Source of the DNA: Auanema rhodensis
Lineage: Eukaryota; Animalia; Nematoda
Assembly: GCA_964057225.1 (NCBI GenBank)
Contig: OZ059896.1
Span: 8,742,001-8,806,000 of the forward strand
Direction of reading: 5' to 3'
DNA: 64,000 nt
The notes beneath the pieces were generated by a model that saw only the letters and a list, made by a program, of their open reading frames with translations, was not told the origin of the DNA and made no database searches. Both the position numbers and the translations under genes were made by a program. The first letter of the stretch is position 1. Each line of letters begins with the position of its first letter. Below are positions 42,080 to 63,751 of the stretch, piece by piece.

Positions 42080-42390
42080 CTCCTATCCGTGTTGCTCTGG
42101 CCACTGCTCAAACTGCCTGACAGGCCAATCTGTCCGTGTCCGTCCGTCTGTGTCACTCGTCTTCTCAACAATTACAGTAGACAGAGTGAGTGTCTGATTG
42201 ACGGCCGACCGGCGGCAGTTCAAACGCATCTTTTATCTGACACATGTAATCCATCACCCTGCCTGTCAGACCAATGGCCTCTCTTCATTCCCGCTATGCT
42301 ATCGGTTCTTGCGTGTTGTCTTCATCGTCTTCATCGTCGTCGCCGTTGTCGTCGTCATCATCGCTGTAGTTGTCGACGGCATCAGTCATA
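42080..42390. promoter_or_regulatory. Candidate TALE (Pbx/Meis)-Hox enhancer about 7 kb downstream of tlp-1
   Basis: GC-rich island with TGACAG 42118-42123 next to CCAAT 42125-42129, TGATTGACGG 42195-42204, TAATCCATCA 42247-42256, and CTGTCA 42263-42268 next to CCAAT 42271-42275. Confidence 0.5.
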
Positions 42391-44077
42391 CAAACTTGGA
42401 ATAGAATTGTTGATTTCTTGAATACTTTAAGTAGAAAATGGCTTACGATGGTATCAGTTGTTCGATGTCGAAGATGTTTGCTTGTTAAACATCTGTTTCC
42501 TTTGGTATATATGAATTCCATTGGGCAAATGTCTGATAATTTACATAAATATTTTGAAAAGTATTATTCAAGAAGAGAGAGAGTAATTGCACTTATCATT
42601 TATATTGTTGATACAATCTATTCCTCCCTCTCTCTCTCAAACTCAGTCTCTCTGAAACTTTTGGAGTAGATTCTTATCAACTTGCAATAATCAAGCAATT
42701 TCTTACTATAAGAAAAAAAGTATTTTCTGAAAACTTTAAATGATAGATTGTGATAGAAATATTCCAAATTTGTACAAAAAAAAATAAACAAAAAACTTTT
42801 GACCTGTTTATGAACAAATACAATAAAATGTATAGAGAAATAGAAAGTTCCAACAAATGTATGTTGATTCATGATCAAACATTATATTTTCTGTAAAATG
42901 TTCCCGAAGCTCATAAATAGTGAAATTTATTTGAGGACATTAACTATTGAATGTCAAACATTTTCAAAACTTAAGGTTTTATAAACCTATTGTCGTGACG
43001 ATGTGGAGAAATTATCAGATACCATTCTACAGTTGTCTTGATAGTTGTACAATCTCTGAGATGCTGTTGACGACATCAACGATGACCTAAACATCTAGAA
43101 TCTGTCATTTTCATAAGAATGTAAGATACTTAATTGTGTTAAAGGAATAACGATCATCAGAATCTCGTGTTGTATAAGATCGGTTGTTTCGAATATTCAG
43201 TCACAGTTTATGTGACCATCTTGTCAACTCATTTATGACTTTTTGTCTTCTGAAATTACCATCATATTGCCGTTCAACTGATTATATTGTCGTCATTTGA
43301 AATAGCTCAACGACATCATAAGCGAAGAAGAGAGAAAGAGGAAATACAGAGAGAAATTAAGAGAGTAGAGAGAGAGGGGGCTGCAATTTAAATCAGTTTT
43401 CTGTCGGTTAAAGTCGTCATAGTTTCCATCGTTATCTTTATCGTCTTCATTGTCTCTCTTTTACTCACCTTAATAATCTTCCTCTATTGAGCTAAAAGAA
43501 TTTTTTTATTTTCTAAGAATGTCTTTAAGTGTCCATATTATGTTTCCTATCATCTTGACAACCATCAGACGGCTGATCATCTGCTGAAATACCTCGTAAA
43601 GAAGCCAGATTTGTATGAACTGTAGTCATTTTATGAAGCTAGAAATATACTATTTTTCTTTAATTTTCTTTACAATTTTAATAAAATAAGGGATTTTTCA
43701 ATATAATATTTTAAAGTTATATAAATAATTGAATAAATAAAATATATTTATCTTGATTTCTAGATATGTTTCAACTGATCTTTAAGCAATTCTCAAGATC
43801 TTATTCGTTTCTATTGTAAAAAAAAAACTTTTTTTCTCATGTTATCTTATTCATAAATTGTTTTTCCTTTCTTTTCGGCATTATTTGATGTTATAACAAG
43901 AAAAAGGTGAAAAATAGTATGATTATATGGATATAATATAAAGAACGATAAGAAGGTTTACTTCTTTAATTATGCAATGATTATGACGTCATCTGAAAGA
44001 TTTACATGGCATATTCCGCATTATTTTATGTAAAGATAATCTGATATATTATATTTGTATTTATATAATATATTAAG

Positions 44078-44115
<38 letters not shown>

Positions 44116-45687
44116 TTATAATATAAAATAATAATCAATATGACCTTTAAATTGGAAGAAAAAAAAATATTACTGACACCGTCTGAATTTGTCTGAATAA
44201 TTTGAACATATCAACCATCTGTTGAATCTTTTGTTAATTCATTTTATGAAAATTTCAATTAAATTAACAGAAACTGGGATTTGAGATTTAAAATTCAAAT
44301 ATATTTTTATTTTTACATAATTGAAAGCTTAAGTTTGACGTGAAGCTATGTTAGCTTATAGCTTTTCTCTACTTTAGATGTCAGATTGGAGATGGATGAG
44401 TTGGCGCATTTTCAAAAATCTAAAACTCTTAGTTGATGATGATGATACAGCTGATGATGATGAAGCACCATAATTGATTGATAATATTTAGAAATGTCAT
44501 TTCTAAATATAAGAAAGAATCAATTTATCATTTTTAATGATAAAACTTATTAAAATCTTTATAAGTATAAGGTAAGTTGAATGATTCATCAAAATCAGTT
44601 GTTGCTATTTGATGACGATGATGATTCTTCTTCTTCTTCTTGTTTTTCTAATCGATTTTAAAATTATTAAATGAATTCTCATATGATGTCATGCTTGTTG
44701 ATTATAATGAATAAGTTAATGACAATAATTTATATAATTTAGAAGTTAACATCATCTTCTTATAATTGAAATGATGTTTCTCCAATCTCCAGAATCATCA
44801 CTAAAACTACAGAAATAACCAGAACCATGTACATGACTGATGTCGTCACCCACCTCATCATCATAATCAATGTCATTGCAGTCATTTTGCTGACTGTCGA
44901 AGGGGGTGGTCGTCGTTGCCATCAGACGTAATGGCGCTGGCCATCTGATGGCAATTCAGATGCGCTTGTCCGGTTTCTGAACTTAAGAAGACATATGTGT
45001 CATGTCATAAATAAAGTCAATAAGAAGCCAAAAGAAGTTGAGGGCCACCTAAAACTCATCGTATTTTCGTCGCAAAAATTTATGTGACTGAGACGAACAA
45101 TACAATTGTCAGTAACGAAGCCATACCGACGACAGATGAGGTTAACGGCTGTTGAATAGATGAGAAAAATGATTCATTAAATAGATGTGTCCTCATCTGA
45201 TTCTGAATGGTTTTAGTCGTTTTCTCATCTTCTTTTCATTCGGATTCCTATTAATTTTCACGAAGAAAAGTTACGATGTGTGCTGTTAGAACAGACGGAA
45301 TTAGCTTTTGATAAATGCCGACAGATGAAAGGAAGTGTTAAAAGAAGATGCCGTCGTTGTTGACGATGATTTAACGTTGACAACAACAATTTCATCTGAT
45401 TTGTATTGTATTTATAAACAATAAAAGAGAAAATCGTGCGAATGATGAGGCATAACAGTAACATCTAACATGTATTTCAATGCGATTTAGTATACTCAAT
45501 GTTACAGAATATTCTCATTTGAAAAAAGCTTTATGAGCATCATTATGTCTTTATTGCTTCACATATTCTTTTGAAAAGCATGGTCATCATCATCAACATG
45601 TTCTTTTTCTTCTGAATACCGACAACGATGAAATAAAACGAAAATGATATCTGAGAGAAACACAGCTGCTTTCATCTATGACTGTAA

Positions 45688-45729
45688 CGTCGTCGTCGTC
45701 GTCGTCATCATCATCATCATCATCATCAT
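45688..45729. repeat. Compound (CGT)n(CAT)n microsatellite
   Basis: cgtcgtcgt run followed by catcatcat run. Confidence 0.85.
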
Positions 45730-47095
45730 TGTCGGTTGACGGTTCATCATCATCTACACAACATTTTCCATCATTAATCTCCAGCCGGCTATTCATTTAG
45801 CTCGTTCTCTCTTGTCAAACGTTGTATCTTTCTAATTAATCAGATCGTTCGGTTGAATCCTCATTCTCAAGTTTACTAAGAGACTAATCAACGCACACAT
45901 TCTCAAAGCGAAATCTCAAAAATAATTTGAGTTTTGTGTAAATTTTAGGGGCGAAATCAAATATTCTATATATATACATATAAGTTATATATAACATATA
46001 GTATTAATGTTATATGTAAACTTTGAAATGTATTCTAGATGATGTTAAACTTGGATGATATTCTTGATAAGCTCATTCAAACTCAGAATTTTCGAAAAAA
46101 ATTAAATAATATATAAGATTATATGTATAATTATATATTTATAAGTTATATATATAATAATAATTTATAATATTATCTTATAAAGAACATATAAGTTTAT
46201 GTAATGAACACTTGTAAACTGGTGTATATACAAGTCGTTTTGTTTTTATAATACCGGTATACTATACTCATTACATCTTATTTTTAATTTATTTTTTAAA
46301 ATATTATATATTTATGTATATCTATATACACATAGATATTTTAATTTTATTTCTCTAAATATTGAATATAATCTAATTTTTGTAATAAATTATATAATAA
46401 GATATTACACATGTATCTATATATCATTGTATAATATAGTATATAAACACTGTATTTACAGTAAATAATATAATATATTACAATATAGTTAATAAAACAG
46501 TCAATAATTCGTTCTTTTAGTCAGCTCATTAATTGAGCTTCTGTTGTTGTCATTAATCAAAATCTTTTTTCTAAGCAGTTATAAACGGAAAAGGAGAGAG
46601 AGAGAGAGTTGGTAAAAAGAAAAGATCGAAGAAGAAGAAGAGAATGAAGAGTACGAAAGAAGAAAAAAAGAAAGAACGAATAGATAAGAGAGATGAACCG
46701 TTTTGCACGTTTTCAGCACAGTTGTATACAATAATCTATTTGATATTATAAAGAATATATATATATTTTAATTATATATATTATATTTTAATTTTTCTAT
46801 AATTTATATTTTAAAAAATAAAATAATATAAATCATTATATAGTATAGTATTAACTATATATATGTATATGTATATATTGACCTTGATGTGATATTTAAA
46901 TTGAAAGGTAAAAATGAAATATATTTGACAAGATTTACCATTCATTTGAGTAATTGCATTGATATTTACTTTAAAAATTTACAACCACATCTATCTATGG
47001 GTCAGAGAGTCATACATTGCTCTTAACCAATGAATTATATCTTTATTCTGTCATAAGAGTAAAGAAGCAAATCAGGGTTGAAAAGTGACTAAAGC

Positions 47096-47130
<35 letters not shown>

Positions 47131-47648
47131 GAGACTAGAAATGAAGAGAGAGGATGGGAGTGGAAGGGGGGCTGAAAGAAGTAGCGAAATGTATATGTTC
47201 ATATTCATTTGAATGTATATCTACTTCTCAAATTACATATTTTCCTTTTATTATTTGAAAATTCAAATATTACTGTGGAAAATAAATTATTTTTGAAATA
47301 TGTTGCCATAAAAGTCAATTATCAACATCTTGATGTGTTCGCAAATGAGAAAATGGTATGTCGGCAAGATCAAAGAAAAGCAATATGTCTTGAATCTGAT
47401 TGATTTGACCATATTAGGTAACGTAACTCCTTCTACTGGACGGGTTTAATGGTAACATGAAAAGACTGATGAGCTAAGTAAGGGTAAACCTTCATACGAT
47501 AAGACCATTTGAAGAAATAATTCTTTGAAAGGGTTAAAGGGATGGGGAGTTGATAATATTATTTATAATTAAAGAAAAGTAAGAACTTTTCTTAGACTAA
47601 AAATGCTTTATATTTAAATAAATATGAATAATTAAGAGGGAAATATAC

Positions 47649-47652
<4 letters not shown>

Positions 47653-47698
<46 letters not shown>
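47653..47698. repeat. (AG)23 microsatellite
   Basis: Uninterrupted AG run. Confidence 0.95.
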
Positions 47699-47705
<7 letters not shown>

Positions 47706-50700
47706 TGTAGTACTGGCTGATGATAAATTCTTCCATTGGTCTATCTATCATTCACATCCAAATCACTCATTCCTATCCTTCTATCTATCCATCAAATAAC
47801 CCAACAACCAACTATTTTCTCTTTTTTTTTCTTTTCAGCCCACACCGTCACATTATCACAACTAACTTTGAGATCTATCACTTGTCGCAAAAGTGTTGTG
47901 AATAGAATGAAGAAGATAGTTATAAGAAAGAAGAGGGAGAGAAAGAGAGAGAGAGAGAGGGGGGGAATAGATAGATAGATAATGAGAGATGAAGAGATAT
48001 ATAGAGAGAGACATAGATAATGAACAGAAATTGAAGCTTAATCACTTATGAGTTTCAGTTTTCTTTTCATATCAAGTCATTCATCTATCATGGTTTTTAA
48101 AGAAAAAAATCATTTTAAATTAATTTTTTTAATTTATTTCCTGAATAATTCAAATAAATTTCTTGTAAAACTGTATTTTCAATTTGGTAATGTAATCCTT
48201 TTATTATACTAATATATCATTATAAATATGTTTTGTTGAGTAATAAATAAAATTTTCAAAAGAATAAGATGAAAAGCTTATATATGAGCGGAATATGAGT
48301 TGTCCAGATGGTTGAGTAGTTGAAGGATTTGTGGGAATGGAAGAAGAAAAAGAAGAAGAACAGAAGATGAAATAAGCAAAAGTAGACGAAAGAGGGTAGA
48401 GAAGGAAGAAGATTAACTAATTTTCATGAATTATTATAAATTATATTTCTATTTAAATATCTCATAAACAACATATTTTTGAAATATTTCTAATAAAAAT
48501 ATTATCTGTTTATACAATTTCAATTTTTCTTTTCATTTAACATTAAGACAAAATGATGGATTGATCACAAATCTCTATCTAGCTTTTGACATGAACATAC
48601 ACACATATCTACCAATCGTTTTGATGATAATCAACATGATTATCATCATTATTATCATAGCAGCATTGACCAATTGAATTTTCTTAAAAGCATACGGTAA
48701 CTCAAAAAAACTTTATCGGATATGTGAAGAAAAATTGAATTTATATAAATCATTATCATCATTTAATTCTTCTAATGCTGCTACTGTTGATGATGATTGT
48801 TGTCTGTCTGGGGGTGTGAAACATGCTGTAAACTATTTAATCAGATTGTAATGATTTAATGATCTAAATATTGTAATATTTAAATTAAAAAATCAAATAT
48901 TAGAAATTTATTTTCAAATATAACTATATGTATAAAATTTTAAATAAAATTATGCTGTTTCATTATGTTTTTTTTTAAATTAAAATTAAAAAAAAACAAT
49001 GATATTTCTAAAATTTCGAAAAAGAGACAGGGAAAGACGGAAAGAGAGCAAACTCTTGGTTTTGATAATTAGCGTTCACATCCCTTTTTTCTATGATTTT
49101 ATCAATTAATCATTCATAAATTCCGAAAACTGTTTGATATGTTGTTAGTGTGAAAAGGTGCGAAGAAGACGAGTATTTCTTAAGATCATAAATCTATTCT
49201 AGACGTCGATCACATCATCGTTGACGTTGTTATAGTCAAGTCATCCTCATCACCTTTTTTTGAGAGAAAATCGTCGTTCTTTTCATTTTTTTCACCTGAC
49301 GATAAGATTTTTGAACAATATATTTCCCCAGTAAAAAAAAATAAATACAGAGTTAATAAGGAATTAAAGTTTTATTTTTTATTTTATAATAAAATATAAA
49401 TTAAATAGTTCGTTGATATTTGGTGATTGTTGAAACTGAAAAAAAAATTGAAAAGAGAGGGAAAACGAAAGAAGAAGATGAATGATCTGATTGACAGGAA
49501 AAAAGCACTTGAATCTACACAATGAGCTAAAGATTTGACTGAACACCTTTTTTGCTATTGACCCGTTATCAGGGGACCTGATCTTTTTAAAAATAAAAAA
49601 AGAAACAAAGGAATTTGAATCTCATGATCTTTAATTTATAAGAATAATTTACATAATATATATGTATATATAGATTATACTATATGATATTTCTTCTATT
49701 AATTTAAATATTGTTTGAAAGAAGAAGAAATGTTTTACTTCCGTATATCTCCCTCTCTCTCCCTCTCTCTCTCTCTCTTTATTTCATTCTTAAATGATCT
49801 AATCGATTAAGTTAGAATGATTATCTGATTTGAGTTGTTTGTTAAGTAATGATAATAAAACTGTTATAACTTCATCATCATCACTTCAAAATGATTTGTC
49901 ATTTTAAAAATGTTTTTCTAGTAGTTTGTACTGACTGATCATAGTTAAGCTAGAAAAATTGACAACTATGAATGATGATGAAAAAGTTGTTTTAAATAAA
50001 ATAATTTAATAGAAAAGAAAACTTTATTCTTTACTCTTATGTTATTCCTCTGTAAAAATATTTTTTAAAATAAAACAATAAGTGGAGATAAGGGAGAGGA
50101 AGAAGAAAGTGAGAGGGGGGGGGATGGGTTAGGGTAGAGGAACAGTTTATCCAAGTATTACGGAAGTTGTCGGGAAAAAAAATATTTTGAGATAATTCAT
50201 TAAATGAAAAAGTGCTCTCAATGAATTAAATGAATAATTGATTTAAAGTTTAGTAAGAATAATGACATTACATCTTGTCTTTTTGCACGAAAAAAAAAGT
50301 TTTTTTTTTAAAACTAAAACAAGTGAAGATTAATAGAATGATATTTGAGCCTTTGATTGAAGTTTAAAAAAAAAAGAAACATTTCAGATCATTGATATTG
50401 AACGTTTTATCGATGTATATGTATGAAGATAAATAAGAAAAATCAATATATATCATATACATATTCATTTAATTATTATATTTTTTTAATTTATTCAATT
50501 TGTTTTATAGAAATTTATAAAAACACATTTACAATATATATATGTAACTTCCGTTTATCATTAATAATAAAATTCAGAATCCCATGTCAGTTGAAGGAAA
50601 ACTACAGTGATACCACTGTTGATTACGGTACCACTTGACAGCACTGTCTGCATTCAGTCGTTCAAGTAAGTCAGTTTTCGTTGGTATTCGCTCTTTCAAT

Positions 50701-53489
50701 TGATAATGTCGTTTTTCATCTTCATCGTCAATTTATCATCTTAGAATAACATTCTCGGCTATCATAGAACCGGTTCATCGTTACCTTCTGTCATCAGATG
50801 ACGATGAACAACGACGTCTTCCATCATTAACTGTCGACATCGTCAGGATAGATAAAATGGAGACGGAAGAGAAAGCAAAAAAAAAAAGGAGAACAGAACA
50901 GAATAGATAACGATGATGATGATGATGATGATGACGACGACGATAGAATACGTCGACGTCAATTTCGAGGAAAGAATAAGAACATCTGGTAGTATTTGGC
51001 AAATAAACAAATAAATAATATTTCTTTTTGTTCTGTATCGATAGAGAGAATATCATGATGATGTTTCATTCATTTATAAAGAAATATCTTATATATTCTT
51101 CCAGATCAACTTGATTTTGCAATCAATATACATAAATATAATTATAATTATATATTTCATAATATTTAAAATTTTAAAAATGTCATTTATTTGCATTTTA
51201 AGCAAAAATTTTTGTTTTTCTTGGTTGTATTCCGTTGACGACATCAACTATAATTTGAAAGCAATAAACGACGAAAGACAATGATGGATTGGAGCTGAAA
51301 TCAGTCATATATTTCTTTTTCATTATCTTTTCTTCTTTTTTTTCTAGTTATTTGAAGAACAACTCTTCATATTAGCAAAACTTTTAAACATAAACATCTA
51401 TCAATTCTTATCAGTCAGTTCTAATTATTTCTTATCATTTATCTAACTATTGTCTTTTTTTTTCCAAAATATCTTAAAAATACTTGTCTTATAATTTATA
51501 ATTTCAAAGAAAATGATAATTATATACATATATTACTATATAAAGAGTAAATATACAACTATTTTTATAAATCATACTGTAATATTAGAATGAAAGATCG
51601 CTCACAAAGAACACCGGTCACATCTGAAACAACCATATTTTCTGAATTAGAGGTACTGTATTCGTTAATAAATCTTTTTTTTTTGGAAAAAAGAAAATAA
51701 TAGACATTATAATTATATTTCAATTACTGTAGATTAAAGGATTAAATAAGGCAGATTTTCACGTATTTGCTTGATAAATAGGTATAGAGAGTATGATTTA
51801 CTTTTCTTCTTCTTTTCCCTTTTTTTTCTTTTCTATCATTTTTTTTCATTTAAACTTCAATTCATTCCTTCATTTATCTCTCCAGCTTTTCATTTACTTT
51901 TAAATTTATTAGATTAATCGTAGTTTCTTGCTTAGTCACACACAACTATGTATATGATTTTCAAAATAATTTATAAGATTTATATAATAATTAATATAAA
52001 TAAATAAATATTATAATTATAATATTATATATATATAGTATAATACAAATTATATTTTATGCTTTATTTTAGTTTACTTTAATTGAGATACTTAAAGCTG
52101 ATTTACTGGTAGTTGTATTCAAATTAAATATAAAATATGTTTTATATTTATAATTATAATAACTATAAAAAGAATATTATATATTAATATAAATATTCAT
52201 AAAATATTTCAAAGTTTCCGAATCAAATATAAAAACTCAAACACGTGTATATGATGTATATATTTAGTTTTATTGAAATTATATTTCATGGACAGTCATG
52301 GATGATTAGAGTAACACAACACCAAATAACAAATTCCTTATATCATATATTCAAATATTTATAAGCTTGTTTAAGCTTATTTTAGTGTTAAAACATCTGA
52401 TAATAGCCATATGAATGAGTTAAAATTAATTTTTTTCTTAATTCTCTATAGGTATTCAACTTTCATTACTCATAACTGTATATACAGATAATCTATTATC
52501 TGTTTAACTATGTATATGTATCTTATAAGATTATATCAAAAGGGTGATGAATGTTAACCAATTGGAATATGACTGAATGAGATACACAGCACGACAAAGA
52601 AGAATGATTAACTTAAAGGATAGACTAGCTTCGGCAAAATATTTATGAGCGATTATGATCTATTAGAATTTCTGTTGATGATGACGAGGGAAGAGCAGAT
52701 GATAGATTTATCATATACAACCCTTCTTCTCATAAGTCTCGAACAACCTCTTATAAACGTTTCATTGTGATTTCTCTCTCTCTCTCTCTCTCTCTTTCTA
52801 TAAGGTTTTCTATAGAAATGTTGTAGCTAATAGATATAATGCTCATCAATAAATAACTAAAACCTCTAAGAATGTGTTAAAATTCAATAGAAAATGATAT
52901 GGAAATTCATCTATTATGATTGATATGATGATTGAATAGAAAATGATGTAAATCTTAGAATCAAACGCATTGTCATATAGATATGAATGATATGTTTAAA
53001 TAGAAAATCATAAAGACTATCATAATCATTCATTTCTTAAAGCTTTATGTGTCTTTTCAACTTTTGAATTAGCTTAATATCGAAATAGAAAGGCTGAAGG
53101 GGGGGGGGTTAATATAATTAAATAAATTAAATATATAATATATACTGTATACTACTACTACTACTACATCTACATGAACATTACTTCATTAACAGCAATA
53201 TCAATCATTCATTCATATCATTTGTTCAGTTTATTTTTAAAATAAAACTTTTTTTTTAGATTTTTTATCATTTAAAATTATATTTCTTGTTTTTTTTTTT
53301 AATTTTAATTATTTTACTGTATTTAATAAAATTGTTGTACAACCGTTCTGCTGAATACATACACGTCATCATAAAAAATACGTGATTAACACGTCAAAAA
53401 GTGACGTGAAATTTAAATAAAAAAATTTAATTAACTATATACATATAGTAAAAAATATATAAATATATGTATATTGTAAAGTAAATATG

Positions 53490-53493
<4 letters not shown>

Positions 53494-53543
<50 letters not shown>
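53494..53543. repeat. (AT)25 microsatellite
   Basis: Uninterrupted AT run. Shorter AT runs occur at about 8224-8252, 30755-30779 and 44082-44110. Confidence 0.9.
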
Positions 53544-53545
<2 letters not shown>

Positions 53546-54769
53546 CTAAACGTATCTTCATCATATACCTAGAAATACTTGTAAAAAATAGTTTTAGTAA
53601 TATATTTTATGTCTCTTCTTAACATAATACTTGTTCTGTTTTGATAAATGTCTTTTTTTAACCTGCAGAAAGCTGAATATAAACTAGTTTTATCGAGTCA
53701 CAGTTAGTTCGTTTCATCTATAAATCAGCTTCCGAAATAGCTTTTAACCAAGCTTTTCCCACAGCGATCCATCTGTCCAGAAGACTTGCCGACCGATGCT
53801 TAAGAGTCAGATCGTCATTGAGCAGCCGGGAGGCAGATTTATGAGTATTCCGGTTGAAAAAGTCGTAAACGAATCCATCTGACATATGAAGACAGGAGCA
53901 AAAGTTTGGAAGGGACCATCTATTACAGATATCCAGAACTATTAAAATAATACAAAATTAATAAATAAGTTTAAAGAACATTAACTATAATATAGTTAAT
54001 AATATTGAATTTGAATAATAAGAAATTTAAATAAGAAATTAGAAGAATTAAGTTTGAAAAATTAAAAAATATTATTGTTCAACAGTTGAAAATAATACTT
54101 TTATCTTCTTCTATATTAAAAGAAAAAATATTTAATCTTATATATATCGTTTGAAATCGTATTTTTACGATTTGAAATACAGAAAGTTTGGCAACATTTA
54201 CAGCTTATCTGTGATGTGATCAACTCGTTTTATTTTAATGATTATCGTTTCAATAGACATCATAAATCTATTTCAAGACGATTTGAAGCACATTAGAATT
54301 CGTTCTTCTGAATCCTCAACAGCCGCTAGAAGAAAACTGTCAGTCATTTGTTCTTTAGTCGAATAAAAGATTTTTCGAGATCTGTGTGAAATCAGTGGTT
54401 GTTTTAACAAAAAATACAAGATGAAGAAAAATGAGAAGAGAAAATGGTCAATAGCTTTTCTCTTATCTTTTTCACAAAAGTAATTTAAAGTTAAAAAAAG
54501 AATATAATAAAAGAAAAGATAGTTAATGAGATTTGAATAGATGAAGAGAGAGAGAGAAATTTAGTGAGAGAGAAAGAGAGAGAGAGAGGGAAAGATAAAA
54601 AGAGATAATGATAGAGAGAGAAATGAGATTTATGCGGTATTCACCTCATTTTCACAAACATATAAATCAGTTACAGCCAATTGACTGATGCTCATTGAAG
54701 ATTAATGTTTTTTTTATTCATTTTCTTTTGGTTCTCCGATTGTAATTGAAAGCATTTTTGAGAAAATAG

Positions 54770-54775
54770 TTTATT
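54770..54775 (-). other. Probable polyadenylation signal of the collagen gene
   Basis: AATAAA on the minus strand (TTTATT on +), about 60 nt after the stop codon. Confidence 0.55.
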
Positions 54776-54834
54776 AACTTCATTATGTATGTACAATATT
54801 ATAATTTGAATTATAATTACATAGATTGGAGTAT

Positions 54835-57800
54835 TTAGAGAAGATAAGGTGTGGCACGAGGTGGTGATGAAGGAGGTTTTGGACGATCATGACGTATGGT
54901 TTTGCGACGAACTCCTATGATATATGGAATTGGTCGATCGTTATTATCTTTTGGCTGAAAATAGTTCATACGGTAGAGATCGTTTGGTCGTGGCGAAGGA
55001 TTTGAGGAAGGAGTACTAGATTGAATTGAATCATATGGATTTGGCGGTGAATCTACAGGAGGCTGATCTTCTGTTTTAGGTGGTTCATTTGGATACACAT
55101 AGCTTGGAGCTGTTGTAGACGGCTGAGAAGGCGCCGGTGTAGTCTCTGCATTGTCATATGGAAGAGGGGATGGAGTAGAGTCTGGTGAATCAGGCGGACT
55201 GTAAGGTTGCTCAGGATATGCATTCTCAGGAGCTGCAGTGGTTGTTGTTGTTGTCTGTTCCACGGGATTGAATGGAGGGTAAGGATAATTGAAAGGAGGA
55301 TAAGGATAACCGTAAGGCGATGGTGGCGATGGTTTGTTATGCACAGTTGGAGGACTGTATGGAGGATAAGGATAGCCATAAGGAGGAGGAGGCCATGGGA
55401 AGCTTGGATAACTTGGATTGGGATATCTAGGGTATGGAGGAGGTAGATAATAGTCACGAGGAGGATTTGATGGGTATTGAGGATATGGTGAATTTGGATA
55501 CTCATGACTTTCACAGCCTGGGAATCCACAATTTTTCGGTGAAGGCTTCTTGGAAGGCTGGCACCAGTCTTCATTACATGGTGTTTCAGGTATCAGAGGG
55601 CCTCGTGTGTTCGTGTGATTACGGCATCCAGGTCCATGACACGGTGGTGCAGGTTCAGTTGCGTGCCCTGGTTGAGGAAGACAGTTTCGTCCCTCACATG
55701 GTTCTTCAGGTTCGAATGGTTCTGGTGTTGGACGTGGTCGTGGGCGAGGATGACAGTTTGGTCCCTCACATGGTTCTTCAGGTTCGAATGGTTCTGGTGT
55801 TGGACGTGGTCTTGGACGAGGATGACAGTTTGGTCCTTCACATGGTTCTTCAGGTTCGAATGGTTCTGGTGTTGGACGTGGTCGTGGACGAGGATGACAG
55901 TTTGGTCCCTCACATGGTTCTTCAGGTTCGAATGGTTCTGGTGTTGGACGTGGTCTTGGACGAGGATGGCAGTTTGGTCCTTCACATGGTTCTTCAGGCT
56001 CAAATGGTTCTGGGGTTGGACGTGGTCGTGGATGGTGATGGCAGTTCGGTCCCTCACATGGTTCTTCAGGTTCGAATGGCTCTGGTGTTGGGCGTGGTCG
56101 TGGACGAGGATGGCAGTTTGGTCCTTCACATGGTTCTTCAGGCTCAAATGGTTCTGGGGTTGGACGTGGTCGTGGACGAGGATGACAGTTTGGTCCCTCA
56201 CATGGTTCTTCAGGTTCGAATGGCTCTGGTGTTGGGCGTGGTCGTGGACGAGGATGGCAGTTTGGTCCTTCACATGGTTCTTCAGGTTCGAATGGCTTTG
56301 GTGTTGGACGTGGTCGTGGATGGTGATGGCAGTTCGGTCCTTCACATGGTTCTTCAGGCTCAAATGGCTCTGGTGTTGGGCGTGGTCGTGGACGAGAATG
56401 GCAGTTTGGTCCTTCACATGGTTCTTCAGGTTCGAATGGCTCTGGTGTTGGACGTGGCCGTGGATGATGATGGCAGTTTGGTCCTACACATGGTTCTTCA
56501 GGTTCGAATGGTTCTGGTGTTGGACGTGGCCGTGGATGATGATGGCAGTTTGGTCCTTCACATGGTTCTTCAGGTTCGAATGGCTCTGGTGTTGGGCGTG
56601 GCCGTGGATGATGATGGCAGTTTGGTCCTTCACATGGTTCTTCAGGTTCGAATGGCTCTGGTGTTGGGCGTGGTCGTGGACGAGAATGGCAGTTCGGTCC
56701 TTCACATGGTTCTTCAGGCTCAAATGGCTCTGGTGTTGGGCGTGGTCGTGGACGAGAATGGCAGTTTGGTCCTTCACATGGTTCTTCAGGTTCGAATGGC
56801 TCTGGTGTTGGGCGTGGTCGTGGACGAGAATGGCAGTTTGGTCCTTCACATGGTTCTTCAGGTTCGAATGGCTCTGGTGTTGGGCGTGGTCGTGGATGGT
56901 GATGGCAGTTTGGTCCTTCACATGGTTCTTCAGGCTCAAATGGCTCTGGTGTTGGGCGTGGTCGTGGACGAGAATGGCAGTTTGGTCCTTCACATGGTTC
57001 TTCAGGTTCGAATGGTTCTGGTGTTGGACGTGGTCGTGGGCGAGGATGACAGTTTGGTCCCTCACATGGTTCTTCAGGTTCGAATGGCTCTGGTGTTGGG
57101 CGTGGTCGTGGACGAGGATGACAGTTTGGTCCCTCACATGGTTCTTCAGGTTCGAATGGTTCTGGTGTTGGGCGTGGTCGTGGATGGTGATGGCAGTCGG
57201 GTCCTTCACATGGTTCTTCAGGCTCAAATGGTTCAGGTGTTGGACGTGGTCGTGGATGGTGATGGCAGTTTGGTCCTTCACATGGTTCTTCAGGTTCGAA
57301 TGGTTCTGGTGTTGGACGTGGTCGTGGACGAGAATGGCAGTTTGGTCCTTCACATGGTTCTTCAGGTTCGAATGGCTCTGGTGTTGGGCGTGGCCGTGGA
57401 TGGTGATGGCAGTTTGGTCCTTCACATGGTTCTTCAGGTTCGAATGGCTCTGGTGTTGGGCGTGGCCGTGGACGAGAATGGCAGTTTGGTCCTTCACATG
57501 GTTCTTCAGGCTCAAATGGTTCAGGTGTTGGACGTGGTCGTGGATAGTGATGGCAGTTTGGTCCTTCACATGGTTCTTCAGGCTCAAATGGTTCAGGTGT
57601 TGGACGTGGTCGTGGATGGTGATGGCAGTTTGGTCCTTCACATGGTTCTTCAGGTTCGAATGGTTCTGGTGTTGGACGTGGTCGTGGACGAGAATGGCAG
57701 TTTGGTCCTTCACATGGTTCTTCAGGTTCGAATGGCTCTGGTGTTGGGCGTGGCCGTGGATGGTGATGGCAGTTTGGTCCCTCACATGGTTCTTCAGGTT

Positions 57801-60800
57801 CGAATGGTTCTGGTGTTGGACGTGGTCGTGGACAGTTTGGTCCCTCACATGGTTCTTCAGGCTCAAATGGTTCTGGGGTTGGACGTGGTCGTGGACGAGG
57901 ATGACAGTTTCGTCCCTCACATGGTTCTTCAGGTTCGAATGGCTCTGGTGTTGGGCGTGGTCGTGGACGAGGATGACAGTTTGGTCCCTCACATGGTTCT
58001 TCAGGTTCGAATGGTTCTGGTGTTGGACGTGGTCGTGGACAGTTTGGTCCCTCACATGGTTCTTCAGGCTCAAATGGTTCTGGGGTTGGACGTGGTCGTG
58101 GACGAGGATGACAGTTTCGTCCCTCACATGGTTCTTCAGGTTCGAATGGCTCTGGTGTTGGGCGTGGTCGTGGACGAGGATGACAGTTTGGTCCCTCACA
58201 TGGTTCTTCAGGTTCGAATGGTTCTGGTGTTGGACGTGGTCGTGGACGAGGATGACAGTTTGGTCCCTCACATGGTTCTTCAGGTTCGAATGGTTCTGGT
58301 GTTGGACGTGGTCGTGGACGGGGATGACAGTTTGGTCCCTCACATGGTTCTTCAAGTTCGAATGGTTCTGGTGTTGGACGTGGTCGTGGAGGAGGATGAC
58401 AGTTTGGTCCTTCACATGGTTCTTCAGGTTCGAATGGTTCTGGTGTTGGACGTGGTCGTGGACGAGGATGACAGTTTGGTCCCTCACATGGTTCTTCAGG
58501 TTCGAATGGTTCTGGTGTTGGACGTGGTCGTGGACAGTTTGGTCCTTCACATGGTTCTTCAGGCTCAAATGGTTCTGGGGTTGGACGTGGTCGTGGACGG
58601 GGATGACAGTTTGGTCCCTCACATGGTTCTTCAGGTTCGAATGGCTCTGGTGTTGGGCGTGGTCGTGGACGAGGATGGCAGTTTGGTCCTTCACATGGTT
58701 CTTCAGGCTCAAATGGTTCTGGTGTTGGACGTGGTCGTGGACGAGGATGACAGTTTGGTCCTTCACATGGTTCTTCAGGCTCAAATGGTTCTGGTGTTGG
58801 GCGTGGCCGTGGATGATGATGGCAGTTTGGTCCTTCACATGGTTCTTCAGGTTCAAATGGTTCTGGGGTTGGACGTGGTCGTGGATGGTGATGGCAGTTT
58901 GGTCCTTCACATGGTTCTTCAGGCTCAACTGGTTGTGGACGTGGGAAGCATTCCGGTCCTTCACATGGTTCTTCTGGCTCTATTGGCTGTGGAGTTGGGC
59001 GAGGGAAGCATTCTGGTCCTTCACATGGTTGTTCTGGCTCTGTTGGCTGTGGAGTTGGGCGAGGGAAGCATTCTGGCCCTTCACATGGTTGTTCTGGCTC
59101 TGTTGGCTGTGGAGTTGGACGAGGGAAGCATTGGGGTCCTTCACATGGTTTTTCAGGTTCAAAAGGCTCTTGTGTTGGACGTGGACGTGGATGATGTTGG
59201 CAGTTTGGTCCTTCACATGGCTGTTCTGGCTCTGTTGGCTGTGGAGTTGGGCGAGGGAAGCATTCGGGTCCTTCACACGGCTGTTCTGGCTCTGTTGGCT
59301 GTGGAGTTGGGCTAGGGAAGCATTCGGGTCCTTCACATGGCTGTTCTGGCTCTGTTGGCTGTAGAGTTGGGCGAGGGAAGCATTCTGGTCCTTCACATGA
59401 TTGCTCTGGCTCTGTTGGCTGTGGAGTTGGGCGAGGGAAGCATTCTGGCCCTTCACATGATTGCTCTGGCTCTGTTGGCTGTGGAGTTGGGCGAGGGAAG
59501 CATTCTGGTCCTTCACATGATTGCTCTGGCTCTGTTGGCTGTGGAGTTGGGCGAGGGAAGCATTCTGGCCCTTCACATGATTGCTCTGGCTCTGTTGGCT
59601 GTGGAGTTGGGCGAGGGAAGCATTCTGGCCCTTCACATGGTTGTTCTGGCTCTGTTGGCTGTGGAGTTGGGCGAGGGAAGCATTCTGGCCCTTCACATGG
59701 CTGTTCTGGCTCTGTTGGCTGTGGAGTTGGGCTAGGGAAGCATTCTGGCCCTTCACATGGTTGTTCTGGCTCTGTTGGCTCTGGAGTAGGATGAAGGAGG
59801 CATTCGGGTCCTTCACATGGTTTTTCAGGTTCAAATGGTTCTTGTGTTGGACGTGGACGTGGATGATGTTGGCAGTTTGGTCCTTCACATGGTTCTTCAG
59901 GTTCGAATGGTTCTGGTGTTGGACGTGGTCCTGGACGAGGAAGACAGTTTGGTCCTTCACATGGTTCTTCAGGTTCGAATGGTTCTGGTGTTGGACGTGG
60001 TCCTGGACGAGGATGGCAGTTTGGTCCTTCACATGGTTCTTCAGGTTCGAATGGTTCAGGTGTTGGTCGGGGTCCTGGACGAGGATGGCAGTTTGGTCCT
60101 TCACATGGTTCTTCAGGTTCGAATGGTTCTGGTGTTGGACGTGGTCCTGGGCGAGGATGGCAGTTTGGTCCTTCACATGGTTCTTCAGGTTCGAATGGTT
60201 CTGGTGTTGGACGTGGTCCTGGACGAGGATGGCAGTTTGGTCCTTCACATGGTTCTTCAGGTTCGAATGGCTTCGGTGTTGGACGGGGTCCTGGACGAGG
60301 ATGACAGTTTCGTCCCTCACATGGTTCTTCAGGTTCGAATGGTTCAGGTGTTGGACGGGGTCCTGGACGAGGATGGCAGTTTGGTCCTTCACATGGTTCT
60401 TCAGGTTCGAATGGTTCAGGTGTTGGACGTGGTCCTGGACGAGGATGACAGTTTGGTCCTTCACATGGTTCTTCAGGTTCAAATGGTTCAGGTGTTGGAC
60501 GGGGTCCTGGACGAGGATGGCAGTTTGGTCCTTCACATGGTTCTTCAGGTTCGAATGGTTCAGGTGTTGGACGTGGTCCTGGACGAGGATGGCAGTTTGG
60601 TTCTTCACATGGTTCTTCAGGTTCGAATGGTTCAGGTGTTGGACGTGGTCCTGGACGAGGATGACAGTTTGGTCCTTCACATGGTTCTTCAGGTTCAAAT
60701 GGTTCAGGTGTTGGACGGGGTCCTGGACGAGGATGGCAGTTTGGTCCTTCACATGGTTCTTCAGGTTCGAATGGTTCAGGTGTTGGACGGGGTCCTGGAC

Positions 60801-62556
60801 GAGGATGGCAGTTTGGTCCTTCACATGGTTCTTCAGGTTCGAATGGTTCAGGTGTTGGACGGGGTCCTGGACGAGGATGACAGTTTGGTCCTTCACATGG
60901 TTCTTCAGGTTCGAATGGTTCAGGTGTTGGACGGGGTCCTGGACGAGGATGGCAGTTTGGTGCTTCACATGGTTCTTCAGGTTCGAATGGTTCAGGTGTT
61001 GGACGGGGTCCTGGACGAGGATGGCAGTTTGGTCCTTCACATGGTTCTTCAGGTTCGAATGGTTCAGGTGTTGGACGGGGTCCTGGACGAGGATGACAGT
61101 TTGGTCCTTCACATGGTTCTTCAGGTTCGAATGGTTCAGGTGTTGGACGGGGTCCTGGACGAGGATGGCAGTTTGGTGCTTCACATGGTTCTTCAGGTTC
61201 GAATGGTTCAGGTGTTGGACGGGGTCCTGGACGAGGATGGCAGTTTGGTCCTTCACATGGTTCTTCAGGTTCGAATGGCTCTGGTGTTGGGCGTGAAGGA
61301 TGGTAGCATTCAGGCCCTTGGCATGATTGTTCAGGTTCGAATGGTTCTGGTGTTGGACGTGGTCGTGGATGATGATGGCAGTTTGGTCCTTCGCATGGTT
61401 CTGTTGGTCCCGTAGGCTGTGGAGTTGTAGTATCAGGGTGGCAATCACGTCCATAACATGGTTCTACTATTTTTGGACTATATGTTGTTACAACGATTGG
61501 AATATCTGAAGTTTCTTCTTCTGGTTCAAAAGTTTTGTTAGAATCATCTTCTGGTACAAGATGATTCGTTCGTTTAGGGCATGTACAATAAATTCCGTCT
61601 ACTCCTGTAGAGCCTGCTTCACCTGTTGGTCCAACCAAGCCGTCCAGTCCACGTGGGCCTGATCGACCACGTACTCCTTCTGCCCCCAACGCTCCGGGCA
61701 TTCCTGGATTTCCAGTTTTTCCTGGAGGACCTGTTGTTCCTTGAGGACCTGTTTGACCAGGTGGACCTGGGACGCCAATCGATCTGATGACCTTGCGGCC
61801 GTTTCTTCCAGATGGACCAATTAATCCTTGTGGTCCAACATCTCCTTGAATTCCTTCATCTCCAGCTTCACCCAGCACTCCTTTTTCTCCTGGTCTTCCT
61901 GGATGTCCTGGAAGACCTGCTAATCCGGGAACTCCATCAACACCTCTCAATCCACTTCGACCAGGTGGTCCAGCAGGACCAGCAGGACATAGGTAACACT
62001 TTGTAGGATAGTTGGGTTTCCTATATAACTTTCGAGCATAATTACCCTTCTTTCCCGGTTTTCCTGATTTGCCAGGTGAGCCAGGCCATCCATCTTTCCC
62101 AGGTGAACCTGGAGGTCCCGGAGGACAGGTATTTCTTCCAGAAGAACAGGAAGCACAAATATCATTAGATCGTTTCTTACGTCCTAGTATGGCATCTAAC
62201 TCTTTGCTAGCTTTTTGAATTCCGAATCCATTATTAGTTCGGATCATCTCACGCCAAGCATCATCAGCAAAAGTCTACAAAACAAGAAAATTTAAATAAA
62301 ATATAAATTATACATATATATGCATATAGTTAATAATAAAATTATAATTAAGTATTTGTTATAATTAAATAAATTAAGAAAATAAATAAAAAAATTTTTT
62401 TTAAAAACTCACACGGAAATCAATCATATCCATCATTACATCATCATATAGTTTATTCATTTGTGTGAATATAGATATAAGCATTGTCATTGCCAATGCA
62501 ATGACAATACCAGATGCCACGCATCCGGCTATCACGAGTGTTCGAGTAGCTGACAT
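54835..62556 (-). CDS. Giant nematode cuticle collagen (2527 aa): Col_cuticle_N region, RKKR site, interrupted Gly-X-Y domain and a Pro/Glu/Arg/Cys repeat tail of about 2240 aa
   Basis: Exon 1 is 62556-62413 (MSATRTLVIAGCVASGIVIALAMTMLISIFTQMNKLYDDVMMDMIDFR, donor GTGAGT). The 138-nt intron is followed by exon 2, 62274-54835 (acceptor TTGTAG, starts TFADDAWREM, 7440 nt open). Cuticle-collagen hallmarks: hydrophobic anchor plus the F-x4-D-A-W-x-E-M block, RKKR (62170-62181), CASC-x6-CPPGPPG, internal CYLCPAGPAG, three Gly-X-Y blocks, and terminal YCTCPKR (61570-61590). Confidence 0.93.
55680..61460 (-). repeat. Coding minisatellite of about 5.8 kb: 72-bp (24-aa) and 60-bp (20-aa) units, 84 C-x4-C units
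   Basis: Type A unit CEGPNC-(HPR/HHH/HSR)-P(G/R)PRPTPEPFEPEEP is 72 bp. Type B unit CEGPECFPRPTPQPTEPEQP is 60 bp. Three 63-bp and one 54-bp variants occur. My count from unit spacing is 3 + 20 + 15 + 46. Confidence 0.95.
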
Positions 62557-63751
62557 ATCAGCTACTCGAGAAAAGAATTCAGAATGAACTATCCGAAAAC
62601 AATAATGTTTCTTCACTGCTTTTAAAGCATTTTCAAATACGGATGTGAGATTTTTAAGTTTTTTCAACTTGTGATTTTCTCGATTCATTCATCAGTTTTT
62701 TAGATTATAAAAAGTAGTCGCTATCGGGTAACCCCTGAACTGATGGGACGTTTTTCATTCATTTACAAGCAGTATTCAAGATTTTCGATGAAAATATTCA
62801 AATATTTTCATTATTCTTTCAAAGAATTTAATATGAAAATGAGAAATAACGAGAAATATATCGAGGGAAAAGTGAAAGGAAAAAAAATGATCTGACAACA
62901 CTTTAAATAGATCATTCAACATCACTTGTGATCCGATTTTGGTGACGACATTCTTTTGGTATTTGATTTATAACAATGATATCATTTGCTTTATTGTATA
63001 TTTCTTATAACTATATTATTATTATTACATTTAAATTATTTTTTAAAAAAAGTTTTATTCAAAACTAAATTATTATTATTATAATTCATCTCCATATTAT
63101 TATAATTTATCACAGAGATTGGCACTACAATATAAGGAAAGAAATTATTTGTTTATTCATTTGTTGTTGTTTTTGTTGTTGTTGTTGAACAAATTTTTGA
63201 AAAAAAAATTGGATAAGAGCTGATGAAAAAGAAAAAAAAATTAATATAAGCTCCTAAATACATATAACAATTTAAATTAATTTTTTTATAAAACATTTTG
63301 TTTATTATTTAAGTAAATATAAATAAAAATGACTTGCAATTGAGAAAAACCGGTATGTAGTCAAAGATTTCCTATACTCAGAATAGATATACACAGAAAA
63401 AGTCAAAATTTTAGACAAAAAAAAAATTAAAATAGTGGATCTGAGATCAAGCTGAATAATGCTAGAAGGGTAGGATGTGATGAATGATCTTTTAAAGAAA
63501 ATGGGCTATGCCCAAAAAAAATTTCACAAAATCTCGCTGTTGGGTATAAAGCTTATATGGTTCTTTAGGAATGTTTGCATAAGATCATTAAAACTTGAAG
63601 CATTTTACTATGCCTAAACCTAAGCTTTGGGAGAGATTTTTGAATATTTTTGAATAAAAAGAAACTAAAAACTCTCTTTCTTTCATCTATATTTGAATTA
63701 TTAAAGAAATATAATTAAAGCCTAACTATAATGATTTGGAAATCATATTGT

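What the first reader, a model, noticed from the sequence alone, without database searches (positions are those of the whole stretch)
54835..62556. A 2527-aa cuticle collagen: normal collagen head on a giant Cys-loop, charge-alternating repeat tail
Seen: a complete canonical cuticle collagen ends at YCTCPKR (about aa 280), but the frame stays open for about 2240 more residues in the same exon. Known: most nematode cuticle collagens are about 300 aa with short C-termini, and even the long Pro-rich ones such as the C. elegans strut collagen BLI-1 are, as I recall, well under half this length. Inference: trimerisation would display three very long extended arms, each with about 170 Cys. This could be a lineage-specific cuticle spacer, strut or surface-coat polymer, conceptually like cnidarian minicollagens or mussel preCols (collagen plus cross-linking flanks). 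I do not recognise this repeat from any described protein.
Basis: partly seen in the sequence, partly recalled or inferred. Interest (0 to 1): 0.9.

Follow-up and report, generated by a model that had tools for sequence, protein, structure and literature searches.

The report
Giant nematode cuticle collagen, orphan tail
A worm skin-collagen gene of normal design runs on, in the same exon and the same transcript, into about 2,240 extra residues of proline-rich repeats that each carry a cysteine pair; nothing like this tail was found in any searched database, which makes it an unusual but not revolutionary structural protein.

Summary
On the minus strand a two-exon gene (ATG 62556, 138-nt GT..AG intron 62412-62275, stop 54837-54835) encodes 2,527 aa.

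- **Head (aa 1-283):** a textbook nematode cuticle collagen. It has Col_cuticle_N, an RKKR furin site, a 9-triplet pro-helix, 21+21 Gly-X-Y triplets and flanking Cys knots.
- **Tail:** 87 C-x4-C pairs account for all 174 tail Cys. They sit in 24-aa or 20-aa Pro/Arg/Glu units. The protein ends in a Tyr/Pro-rich domain of about 225 aa.
- **Transcript:** cDNA-type contigs from two public runs remove the intron exactly. They run without mismatch from the 5'UTR through YCTCPKR and 207 nt into the tail.
- **Selection and assembly:** the units show purifying selection (pN/pS 0.16), 44 distinct DNA versions among 64 units, and no exact internal repeat longer than 316 nt. Exon 2 contains no intron-like island.
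- **Homology:** the tail has no Pfam, PDB or ESM Atlas match, and no real homologue among 1.84 billion representative proteins.

Not shown: a read spanning the whole array, the protein itself, and its place in the cuticle.

Best reading: a lineage-specific chimeric cuticle collagen whose trimeric head carries three very long, extended tails that can be cross-linked (a tether, spacer or strut). This is a new variant of a known kind.

The scan also noted this same stretch once more (s1-407228).

The parts
62557..62599 (-). 5' untranslated region as far as the cDNA-type contigs reach
   Evidence: Contigs of X10 and X11 end at 62599 and 62589; depth is zero upstream in those runs, while DNA run X2 stays covered.
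62413..62556 (-). Exon 1, 48 codons: start codon, hydrophobic membrane anchor (aa 6-29), most of the Col_cuticle_N domain
   Evidence: Sequence read; Pfam PF01484 E 3.8e-6, 27.4 bits against a cut-off of 23.5.
62275..62412 (-). Intron, 138 nt, GTGAGT...TTGTAG, 10% GC
   Evidence: Removed exactly in contigs of X10 (1,099 nt) and X11 (1,089 nt), which join 62413 to 62274 with 0 mismatches. Present in the DNA contig of X2. GC content.
61570..62274 (-). Collagen head within exon 2 (aa 49-283): RKKR furin site (aa 80-83, 62170-62181), Cys cluster CASCx6C, 9-triplet N-pro-helix, 19-aa gap with the CYLC knot, 21 + 21 Gly-X-Y triplets split by 5 aa, CTC knot, PKR
   Evidence: Pfam Collagen E 1e-23; block parsing; layout matches cluster B of PMC7852208.
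61459..61569 (-). Unique acidic linker (aa 284-320) with an NKT sequon and a first FEPEE motif
   Evidence: Its first 32 aa align to the C-terminal extension of an Aphelenchoides bicaudatus collagen (44% identity, E 1e-6 pairwise). Covered by the cDNA-type contigs.
55699..61458 (-). Main repeat array (aa 321-2240): 83 units, each starting with C-x4-C. 24-aa units have the form CEGPNC-H(P/H/S)(R/H)P(G/R)PRPTPEPFEPEEP. The sub-families lie in blocks.
   Evidence: Unit map; TRF period 72, 81.4 copies; pN/pS 0.157, 44 of 64 units distinct at DNA level; longest exact internal repeat 316 nt.
58912..59817 (-). Inner block of 20-aa units (CEGPECFPRPTPQPTEPEQP type), aa 868-1169, interrupted once by a 24-aa unit
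   Evidence: TRF rows with period 60, 120 and 180 at 58900-59826.
55513..55698 (-). Four degenerate terminal C-x4-C units (aa 2241-2302) with an NHT sequon
   Evidence: Degenerate edge units also open the array (aa 321-387), as expected for a natural tandem array.
54838..55512 (-). Unique Tyr/Pro-rich C-terminal domain (aa 2303-2527): YGYPYPP motifs, a TTTTTT run, a basic end
   Evidence: Over aa 2260-2527 the composition is 28% Pro, 10% Tyr, 10% Ser. Twenty-eight of the protein's 37 Tyr lie at or after aa 2307. No Pfam match.
54835..54837 (-). Stop codon TAA
54770..54775 (-). AATAAA, the likely polyadenylation signal about 60 nt after the stop
   Evidence: Read directly; not tested with reads.

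Best explanation
This is a genuine, expressed, lineage-specific chimeric cuticle collagen of 2,527 aa (282 kDa, pI 4.9).

Shown here: the head has every feature of an ordinary nematode cuticle collagen. The same exon and the same mRNA continue into the tail. The tail units are kept by purifying selection at the protein level.

Inferred mechanism: the head is made as a membrane-anchored pro-collagen, cut at RKKR, and trimerised through its Gly-X-Y domains and Cys knots, as in other cuticle collagens. Trimerisation brings three tails together in register. Each tail is a proline-rich (35% Pro), net-acidic polyampholyte without a folded structure and has a contour length of up to about 0.7 micrometres. 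Basic Pro-Arg arms alternate with acidic Pro-Glu arms, which could pair neighbouring chains electrostatically. The 87 evenly spaced C-x4-C pairs could then lock this arrangement by disulfides. Those disulfides could be small intrachain rings or, in a trimer, interchain knots in the way two Cys per chain staple collagen helices. The Tyr/Pro-rich end (YxY motifs) is a likely substrate for the peroxidase-driven tyrosine cross-linking of nematode cuticle. The molecule would therefore be fixed at both ends. It would act as a long, reducible tether, spacer or strut within or across cuticle layers.
For: Gene structure and length.

Head features: Col_cuticle_N and Collagen; RKKR, 9-triplet pro-helix, 19-aa gap, 21+5aa+21 triplets, CYLC and CTC knots. 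These match the definition and cluster B of PMC7852208.

Transcript: X10 and X11 contigs lie on 61363-62274 plus 62413-62599 with 0 mismatches. The intron is removed and the transcript passes YCTCPKR (ends 61570) by 207 nt. Intron depth is 0 in these runs but 60 in DNA run X2. Repeat words are at least as abundant relative to the unique head in these runs (about 150x) as in DNA runs (about 46-94x). This is a rough figure from summed contig depths.

No hidden intron: the minimum GC of any 60-nt window in exon 2 is 30%, against 10% in the intron. There is no GTAAGT or GTGAGT in exon 2.

Selection: third-position variation is 0.115, against 0.024 and 0.030 at positions 1 and 2; pN/pS is 0.157. 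Every unit keeps C-x4-C.

Natural array: 44 of 64 units differ in DNA, identity decays with distance, edge units are degenerate, and the longest exact repeat is 316 nt.

Disorder: AlphaFold2 gives pLDDT 50 and no secondary structure.

Cuticle chemistry: disulfide and tyrosine cross-links and reductive molting are described in PMC11304992.
Against: - No read or contig spans the 5.8-kb array, so its exact length and its continuity in the mRNA are not directly shown. Short-read contigs break at 61340-61363 in every run.
- The run type of X10 and X11 is a guess by the tool; I infer cDNA from the exact intron removal.
- There is no protein-level evidence and no localisation.
- Whether the Cys pairs bond within or between chains is unknown.
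- The PKR directly after the C-terminal knot could be a cleavage site that frees the tail.
- The search among very long proteins was swamped by vertebrate type VII collagens, so other giant nematode collagens with different tails cannot be excluded.
Confidence: 0.65

Rival explanations
1. The collagen head serves only as a carrier. The tail is cut off at or near the PKR that follows the C-terminal Cys knot. It then acts on its own as a secreted, acidic, probably O-glycosylated proline-rich polymer, for example a mucin-like surface coat or lubricant.
For: A dibasic KR lies at aa 282-283, exactly at the head/tail border. There are 81 T-P-x-P motifs, one per unit, a context known from general knowledge to favour mucin-type O-glycosylation. 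C-terminal processing occurs in at least one cuticle collagen, SQT-3 by DPY-31 (PMC11304992).
Against: The CPxR motif after the knot is common in ordinary cuticle collagens retrieved here, so the KR may be incidental. There is no R at P4 for furin. [quoted passage not shown]
Confidence: 0.15
2. The array length is an assembly artefact, or is highly variable, and the real protein is much shorter.
For: No independent contig crosses the array. Arrays of 72-nt units are hard to assemble.
Against: Units are diverse: 44 DNA versions among 64 units. Sub-families lie in ordered blocks. The longest exact internal repeat is only 316 nt, so ordinary long reads can anchor it. Summed repeat depth in DNA runs is roughly 46-94 times the single-copy depth, the order expected for about 87 units (a rough figure).
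Confidence: 0.1
3. The open frame is real, but most mRNAs end or are spliced within the array, so the full 282-kDa protein is rare or absent.
For: Short-read contigs cannot show continuity through the array.
Against: Exon 2 has no AT-rich island and no consensus donor. The only TTTTCAG lies about 125 nt before the stop. Repeat words are abundant in the cDNA-type runs. Purifying selection acts on units all along the array.
Confidence: 0.07
4. The tail is a neutral runaway repeat expansion that is tolerated but has no function.
For: It is low in complexity and has no homologues.
Against: pN/pS is 0.157. All 87 Cys pairs are invariant. Every indel preserves the frame. There are zero stops in 6.7 kb.
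Confidence: 0.03

Closest known systems
Ordinary nematode cuticle collagens (Pfam Col_cuticle_N + Collagen; group 4, cluster B of Teuscher et al. 2019, PMC7852208)
   Same: The N-terminal anchor, RxxR site, N-pro-helix, 42-triplet main domain with one short interruption, and flanking Cys knots are all present. The best full-head matches are ordinary-length collagens at 33-41% identity.
   Different: After the last Gly-X-Y run the C-terminus is about 2,250 aa. The median in the 138 nematode collagens retrieved here is 53 aa and the maximum is 775 aa. No close orthologue (over 45% identity) was seen.
BLI-1, the strut collagen of C. elegans, and BLI-1-like strongylid collagens (PMC10657453)
   Same: It is an unusually large cuticle collagen with a charged C-terminal extension that lacks known motifs. 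BLI-1 is proposed to link cuticle layers.
   Different: BLI-1's size comes from both an extended N-terminus and an extended C-terminus; here the N-terminus is standard. BLI-1-like proteins of 880-1,101 aa score lower against this head (49-79 bits) than ordinary collagens do (94-136 bits). Their tails have no C-x4-C arrays. BLI-1 is roughly 960 aa by my recollection, which fits the 125-kDa tagged monomer reported in the paper.
Cnidarian minicollagens and mussel byssal preCols (collagen core with cross-linking flanks)
   Same: The concept is shared: a collagen trimer that carries non-collagen, Pro-rich, Cys-rich or His-rich cross-linking domains.
   Different: There is no sequence relation. The minicollagen six-Cys domain is absent, since only isolated C-x4-C pairs occur. 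The tail here is about ten times longer than the collagen part and lies on one side only. This comparison rests on general knowledge.
Proline-rich extended polymers: titin PEVK, plant extensins, IgG3 hinge
   Same: It shares high Pro content, alternating basic and acidic modules (PEVK), YxY motifs for tyrosine cross-links (extensins), and Cys pairs in a polyproline context that bridge chains (IgG3 hinge).
   Different: These are analogies of composition only, taken from general knowledge. No homology was detected.
P0244, an unnamed 275-aa protein from a public read assembly (Calx-beta domain followed by 22-aa Pro-rich units with CPGPTC)
   Same: Among 1.84 billion representatives it is the only hit with the same logic: C-x4-C pairs at regular spacing in a Pro/Arg/Lys-rich repeat (53% identity over 143 aa, E 2.5e-6).
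   Different: It has no collagen domain and no acidic arm, its organism is unknown, and the match is weak and compositional. It is probably convergent.

Membership tests
Nematode cuticle collagen | Col_cuticle_N domain (PF01484) at the N-terminus | tested here: met
   Exon 1 alone scores 27.4 bits against a gathering cut-off of 23.5, E 3.8e-6.
Nematode cuticle collagen | RxxR subtilisin/furin site (homology box A) before the Gly-X-Y regions | tested here: met
   RKKR at aa 80-83; the feature is described in PMC10657453.
Nematode cuticle collagen | N-pro-helix of about 10 triplets, 12-31 residues before a main collagen domain of 37-43 triplets flanked by Cys knots (PMC7852208) | tested here: met
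   Nine triplets (aa 101-127), a 19-aa gap holding CYLC, then 21 + 21 triplets split by 5 aa (cluster B pattern), then CTC.
Nematode cuticle collagen | Short non-collagen C-terminus (typical rather than defining) | tested here: not met
   About 2,250 aa follow the last Gly-X-Y run, against a median of 53 aa in 138 retrieved collagens.
BLI-1-type strut collagen | Extended N-terminal domain required for function, and closest similarity to BLI-1-like proteins | tested here: not met
   The N-terminus is of standard length, with RKKR at aa 80. BLI-1-like strongylid proteins rank below ordinary collagens by BLAST. C. elegans BLI-1 itself was not retrieved, and no tree was built.
Minicollagen | Six-Cys cysteine-rich domains flanking a short collagen core | tested here: not met
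   All 174 tail Cys are in isolated C-x4-C pairs 14-18 residues apart. The pattern of the minicollagen domain is from general knowledge.
Mucin-like (PTS) secreted polymer | Dense O-glycosylation of Thr/Ser in a Pro-rich context | not testable with these tools
   The tail has 81 T-P-x-P motifs. Glycosylation itself needs biochemistry.
Any known protein family for the tail | Detectable sequence or profile similarity | tested here: not met
   Pfam gave none, PDB none at E up to 1, and ESM Atlas no usable hit. phmmer against 1.84e9 representatives gave only 7 weak low-complexity hits. The metagenome scan found none.

The most novel reading that the evidence does not exclude
The three tails of one collagen trimer are stapled to each other at every unit by interchain disulfides. 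Each C-x4-C would act like the two-Cys-per-chain knot that closes collagen helices. The result would be a rope-ladder cable about 0.6 micrometres long that is nucleated by a collagen head, anchored by tyrosine cross-links at its far end, and opened reductively at each molt. The unit may even have arisen by repeated duplication of the collagen's own 24-aa 'C-terminal knot plus acidic linker' segment. That segment resembles the unit consensus slightly more than chance (codon-shuffle p about 0.004, protein shuffle p about 0.02). This would be a new structural principle for extracellular cables.
Probability: 0.15. Interest if true: 0.8.

Novelty: new variant of a known kind. Interest (0 to 1): 0.6.

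Why it matters
Nematode cuticle collagens are a very large but uniform family of roughly 300-aa proteins. How particular members build special structures such as struts, layers and surface is an open question, and so far BLI-1 has been the one outsized example.

This protein has a standard head and a tail about 2,240 aa long that is under selection, rich in cysteine pairs and charge-patterned. It is about 2.6 times the size of BLI-1.

It offers a natural test of how a collagen trimer can be used to deliver or organise a long disordered polymer in an apical matrix. Its regular design, with a disulfide pair every 24 residues between alternating basic and acidic proline arms and a tyrosine-rich end, may also interest protein-materials researchers.

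The tail has no detectable relatives, so it is also an example of lineage-specific matrix innovation by repeat expansion.

Tried and rejected
1. Searching very long proteins (1,363-4,338 aa) with the head region returned only Gly-X-Y-driven matches to vertebrate type VII and other collagens. It says nothing about giant nematode collagens.
2. The mid-length search (495-1,575 aa) with the N-terminal 110 residues of exon 2 found BLI-1-like and fused gene models but no orthologue.
3. The metagenome scan with the linker and first repeats found 29 pattern matches, none confirmed.
4. ESM Atlas and PDB searches of the tail gave nothing.
5. AlphaFold2 on the linker plus eight units gave no confident structure, which I read as disorder rather than as a fold.
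6. The supplementary table of C-terminus lengths in PMC7852208 is not held.
7. The long ORFs on the plus strand (1,293 and 1,249 aa) were rejected as mirror effects of a stop-poor repeat, because the GT..AG intron fixes the transcript to the minus strand.
8. The 'skips 251' joint at 61714-61966 in the cDNA-type runs was rejected as a splice of this gene. Its ends on the gene's strand are not GT..AG and its shorter side is only 23 nt. Its depth (74-103) exceeds the gene's own (17-25), and the gene's own contig runs straight through. It most likely comes from a more highly expressed paralogous collagen.
9. I did not try to identify the coded organism. The only placement I can give is 'nematode with about 25-30% GC outside genes'.
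Full report
**What is there**

The minus strand between 62556 and 54835 holds a two-exon gene.
- Exon 1 (62556-62413) starts with ATG and encodes 48 residues.
- A 138-nt intron (62412-62275) begins GTGAGT, ends TTGTAG, and is 10% GC.
- Exon 2 (62274-54835) is open for 2,479 codons and ends in TAA.
It has a mass of 282 kDa and a pI of 4.9.
- An AATAAA lies about 60 nt after the stop.
- The gene is 50-55% GC in a region of about 25% GC.

**The head**

Pfam finds Col_cuticle_N in exon 1 (27.4 bits, cut-off 23.5) and the collagen triple-helix repeat in the next 235 residues (E 1e-23). Parsing the sequence gives, in order:
- a hydrophobic anchor at aa 6-29;
- RKKR at aa 80-83;
- a CASCx6C cluster;
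- a 9-triplet Gly-X-Y run (aa 101-127);
- a 19-residue gap holding CYLC;
- 21 triplets, a 5-residue break, and 21 more triplets;
- CTC, within YCTCPKR at aa 277-283.

This matches the definition of cuticular collagens in Teuscher et al. (PMC7852208): 37-43 triplets between Cys knots, with an N-pro-helix of about 10 triplets lying 12-31 residues upstream. The single short interruption places it in their cluster B. The head is therefore an ordinary cuticle collagen.

Its best matches are ordinary-length collagens from many nematode clades at 33-41% identity, so no close orthologue was seen. BLI-1-like strongylid collagens of 880-1,101 aa score lower against it.

**The tail**

After a 37-residue acidic linker come 87 C-x4-C pairs, which account for all 174 tail cysteines.
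- Sixty-five units are 24 aa, of the form CEGPNC-H-P/H/S-R/H-P-G/R-PRPTPEPFEPEEP.
- Thirteen units are 20 aa, of the form CEGPECFPRPTPQPTEPEQP, and lie in one inner block (aa 868-1169).
- A few units are 18, 21 or 22 aa.
- The first three and last four units are degenerate.

Tandem Repeats Finder reports a period of 72 nt, 81.4 copies and 88% matches. The array is 35% Pro, 20% Glu, 9% Arg, 9% Cys and 5% His, with a net charge of about -217.

The last 225 residues or so are unique. They are Tyr/Pro-rich, with YGYPYPP motifs, a Thr run and a basic end; aa 2260-2527 are 10% Tyr and 28% Pro. There is one T-P-x-P motif per unit, 81 in all. The tail has two N-glycosylation sequons.

**Is the frame real?**

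- Across the array the coding frame has no stop, whereas the other frames have 2, 189, 7, 47 and 5.
- All unit-length variants are multiples of three.
- Among the 64 24-aa units there are 44 DNA versions but only 16 protein versions.
- Variation is 0.115 at third codon positions, against 0.024 and 0.030 at the first two positions.
- Mean pS is 0.246 and mean pN is 0.039, a ratio of 0.157.

The protein sequence of the units is therefore under purifying selection.

**Is it transcribed as one unit?**

Fourteen public runs from four studies hold the head region. In two runs that the tool guesses to be RNA (X10 and X11), one contig each (1,099 and 1,089 nt) lies on 61363-62274 and continues at 62413-62599 or 62413-62589, with no mismatch. 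The intron is thus removed at exactly the predicted borders. The transcript runs from the 5'UTR through the whole collagen head, past YCTCPKR (which ends at 61570), and 207 nt into the tail. It stops only where short-read assembly breaks on the repeat.

Depth in the intron and upstream of 62612 is zero in these runs, whereas DNA run X2 covers both at 60x. I take this as proof that these runs are cDNA and that the transcript neither ends nor splices before the array.

Words of the repeat are very deep in the cDNA-type runs. Averaged over the five array bins, summed depth is about 150 times the unique head depth, against about 46-94 times in DNA runs X2 and X9. The tool warns that contig depths are a poor measure. 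I use this only as a rough sign that the array is present in RNA, and that its genomic copy number is of the order of the assembled 87 units.

Exon 2 has no AT-rich island (minimum GC 30% in any 60-nt window) and no GTAAGT or GTGAGT. Its only TTTTCAG lies about 125 nt before the stop. A hidden intron is therefore unlikely.

No read spans the array, so full continuity remains to be shown.

**Is the array an assembly artefact?**

Four observations fit a natural array that long reads can resolve:
- the units are diverse;
- sub-families lie in ordered blocks;
- identity decays with distance, from 0.935 at lag 1 to 0.893 at lag 40;
- the longest exact internal repeat is 316 nt.

I put the chance of a serious length error at about 10%.

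**Relatives of the tail**

- Pfam finds nothing.
- PDB finds nothing at E up to 1.
- ESM Atlas gives no usable hit.
- A metagenome scan gives nothing.
- An exhaustive phmmer search used the last 521 residues (nine and a half units plus the unique end) against 1.84 billion representative proteins. It gave seven hits at E up to 0.001. All are low-complexity repeats and none is a collagen.

The only hit with a similar design is P0244. It is an unnamed 275-aa protein from a public read assembly, with a Calx-beta domain followed by 22-aa Pro-rich units holding CPGPTC. It is probably convergent.

The source species' own protein is not in these libraries. Unannotated relatives in sister genomes therefore cannot be excluded.

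Among 138 nematode collagens retrieved, the longest C-terminus is 775 aa and none has a C-x4-C array. Full-text searches found no description of such a protein. Adams et al. call BLI-1 the largest cuticle collagen of C. elegans (PMC10657453).

**Origin**

The first 32 residues after the last triplets align with the C-terminal extension of an Aphelenchoides bicaudatus collagen (44% identity). The linker already holds FEPEE, which is the acidic motif of the unit.

The 24 residues from the CTC knot to this FEPEE resemble the unit consensus slightly more than shuffles do (DNA p about 0.004, protein p about 0.02). This hints that the array grew out of the collagen's own C-terminal segment rather than by fusion with a foreign gene. 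The evidence is weak.

**How it most likely works (inference)**

The steps known for cuticle collagens are membrane-anchored synthesis, cleavage at RxxR, trimerisation, disulfide knots, and later tyrosine cross-linking; disulfides are reduced at molting (PMC11304992). Applied here, these steps would produce a trimer with three tails in register.

AlphaFold2 sees no fold in the tail (pLDDT 50, no secondary structure). With 35% Pro, this suggests an extended chain with a contour of up to about 0.7 micrometres at 0.31 nm per residue. That length is comparable with or greater than the thickness of a small nematode's cuticle.

- Alternating basic and acidic arms could align chains.
- The Cys pairs could lock them, either as intrachain rings (the oxytocin ring is also C-x4-C) or as interchain knots.
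- The YxY-rich end could be fixed by tyrosine cross-links.

I therefore favour a long, reducible tether, spacer or strut. The main rival is that the tail is cut off at PKR and acts alone as a mucin-like polymer (about 15%).

**Verdict**

It is a new variant of a known kind. Interest is moderate to high for cuticle and biomaterial specialists.

Noticed in passing
window 61100-61400 (table 2): Relative to the single-copy head, repeat words are about 1.6-3 times more abundant in the two cDNA-type runs than in the DNA runs. This could reflect 3' bias, assembly effects, or a second expressed gene with the same repeat elsewhere in the genome.
   Followed up: no
window 61714-61966, 61884-61939, 62108-62163: Short, deeper contig pieces and a non-canonical 'skips 251' joint lie on the Gly-X-Y part in the cDNA-type runs. 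They most likely come from more highly expressed paralogous collagens.
   Followed up: partly
P0244 (Logan contig of sample ERR14875856): An unnamed protein has a Calx-beta domain followed by 22-aa Pro/Arg/Lys-rich units that each hold a CPGPTC pair. It has the same C-x4-C-in-polyproline logic in a non-collagen context, and its organism is unknown.
   Followed up: partly
P0122, Aphelenchoides bicaudatus collagen: Its C-terminal extension shares the first 32 linker residues with this gene. It then carries its own short tandem repeat (QQNLLKQKCQL-like), so repeat growth in this collagen C-terminus may have happened more than once.
   Followed up: partly
P0121 (Nippostrongylus), P0248 (Pristionchus), P0124, P0128: Several 'long' database collagens are two adjacent collagen genes merged into one model, with duplicated N-terminal domains. 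They are not truly long collagens.
   Followed up: no
window 54545-54621: A (CT/AG)n-rich low-complexity tract lies about 200 nt downstream of the gene's stop.
   Followed up: no
window 55434-59315 and 55615-59364, plus strand: Antisense ORFs of 1,293 and 1,249 aa exist only because the repeat is poor in stop codons. They are not evidence of a gene.
   Followed up: yes
window 34318-34863, plus strand: An ORF here has a weak, sub-threshold C2H2 zinc-finger match (E 0.0025). The other large ORFs in the window had no Pfam match, and the 14 kb downstream of the collagen gene's 3' end (window 40000-54800) is almost free of long ORFs.
   Followed up: no
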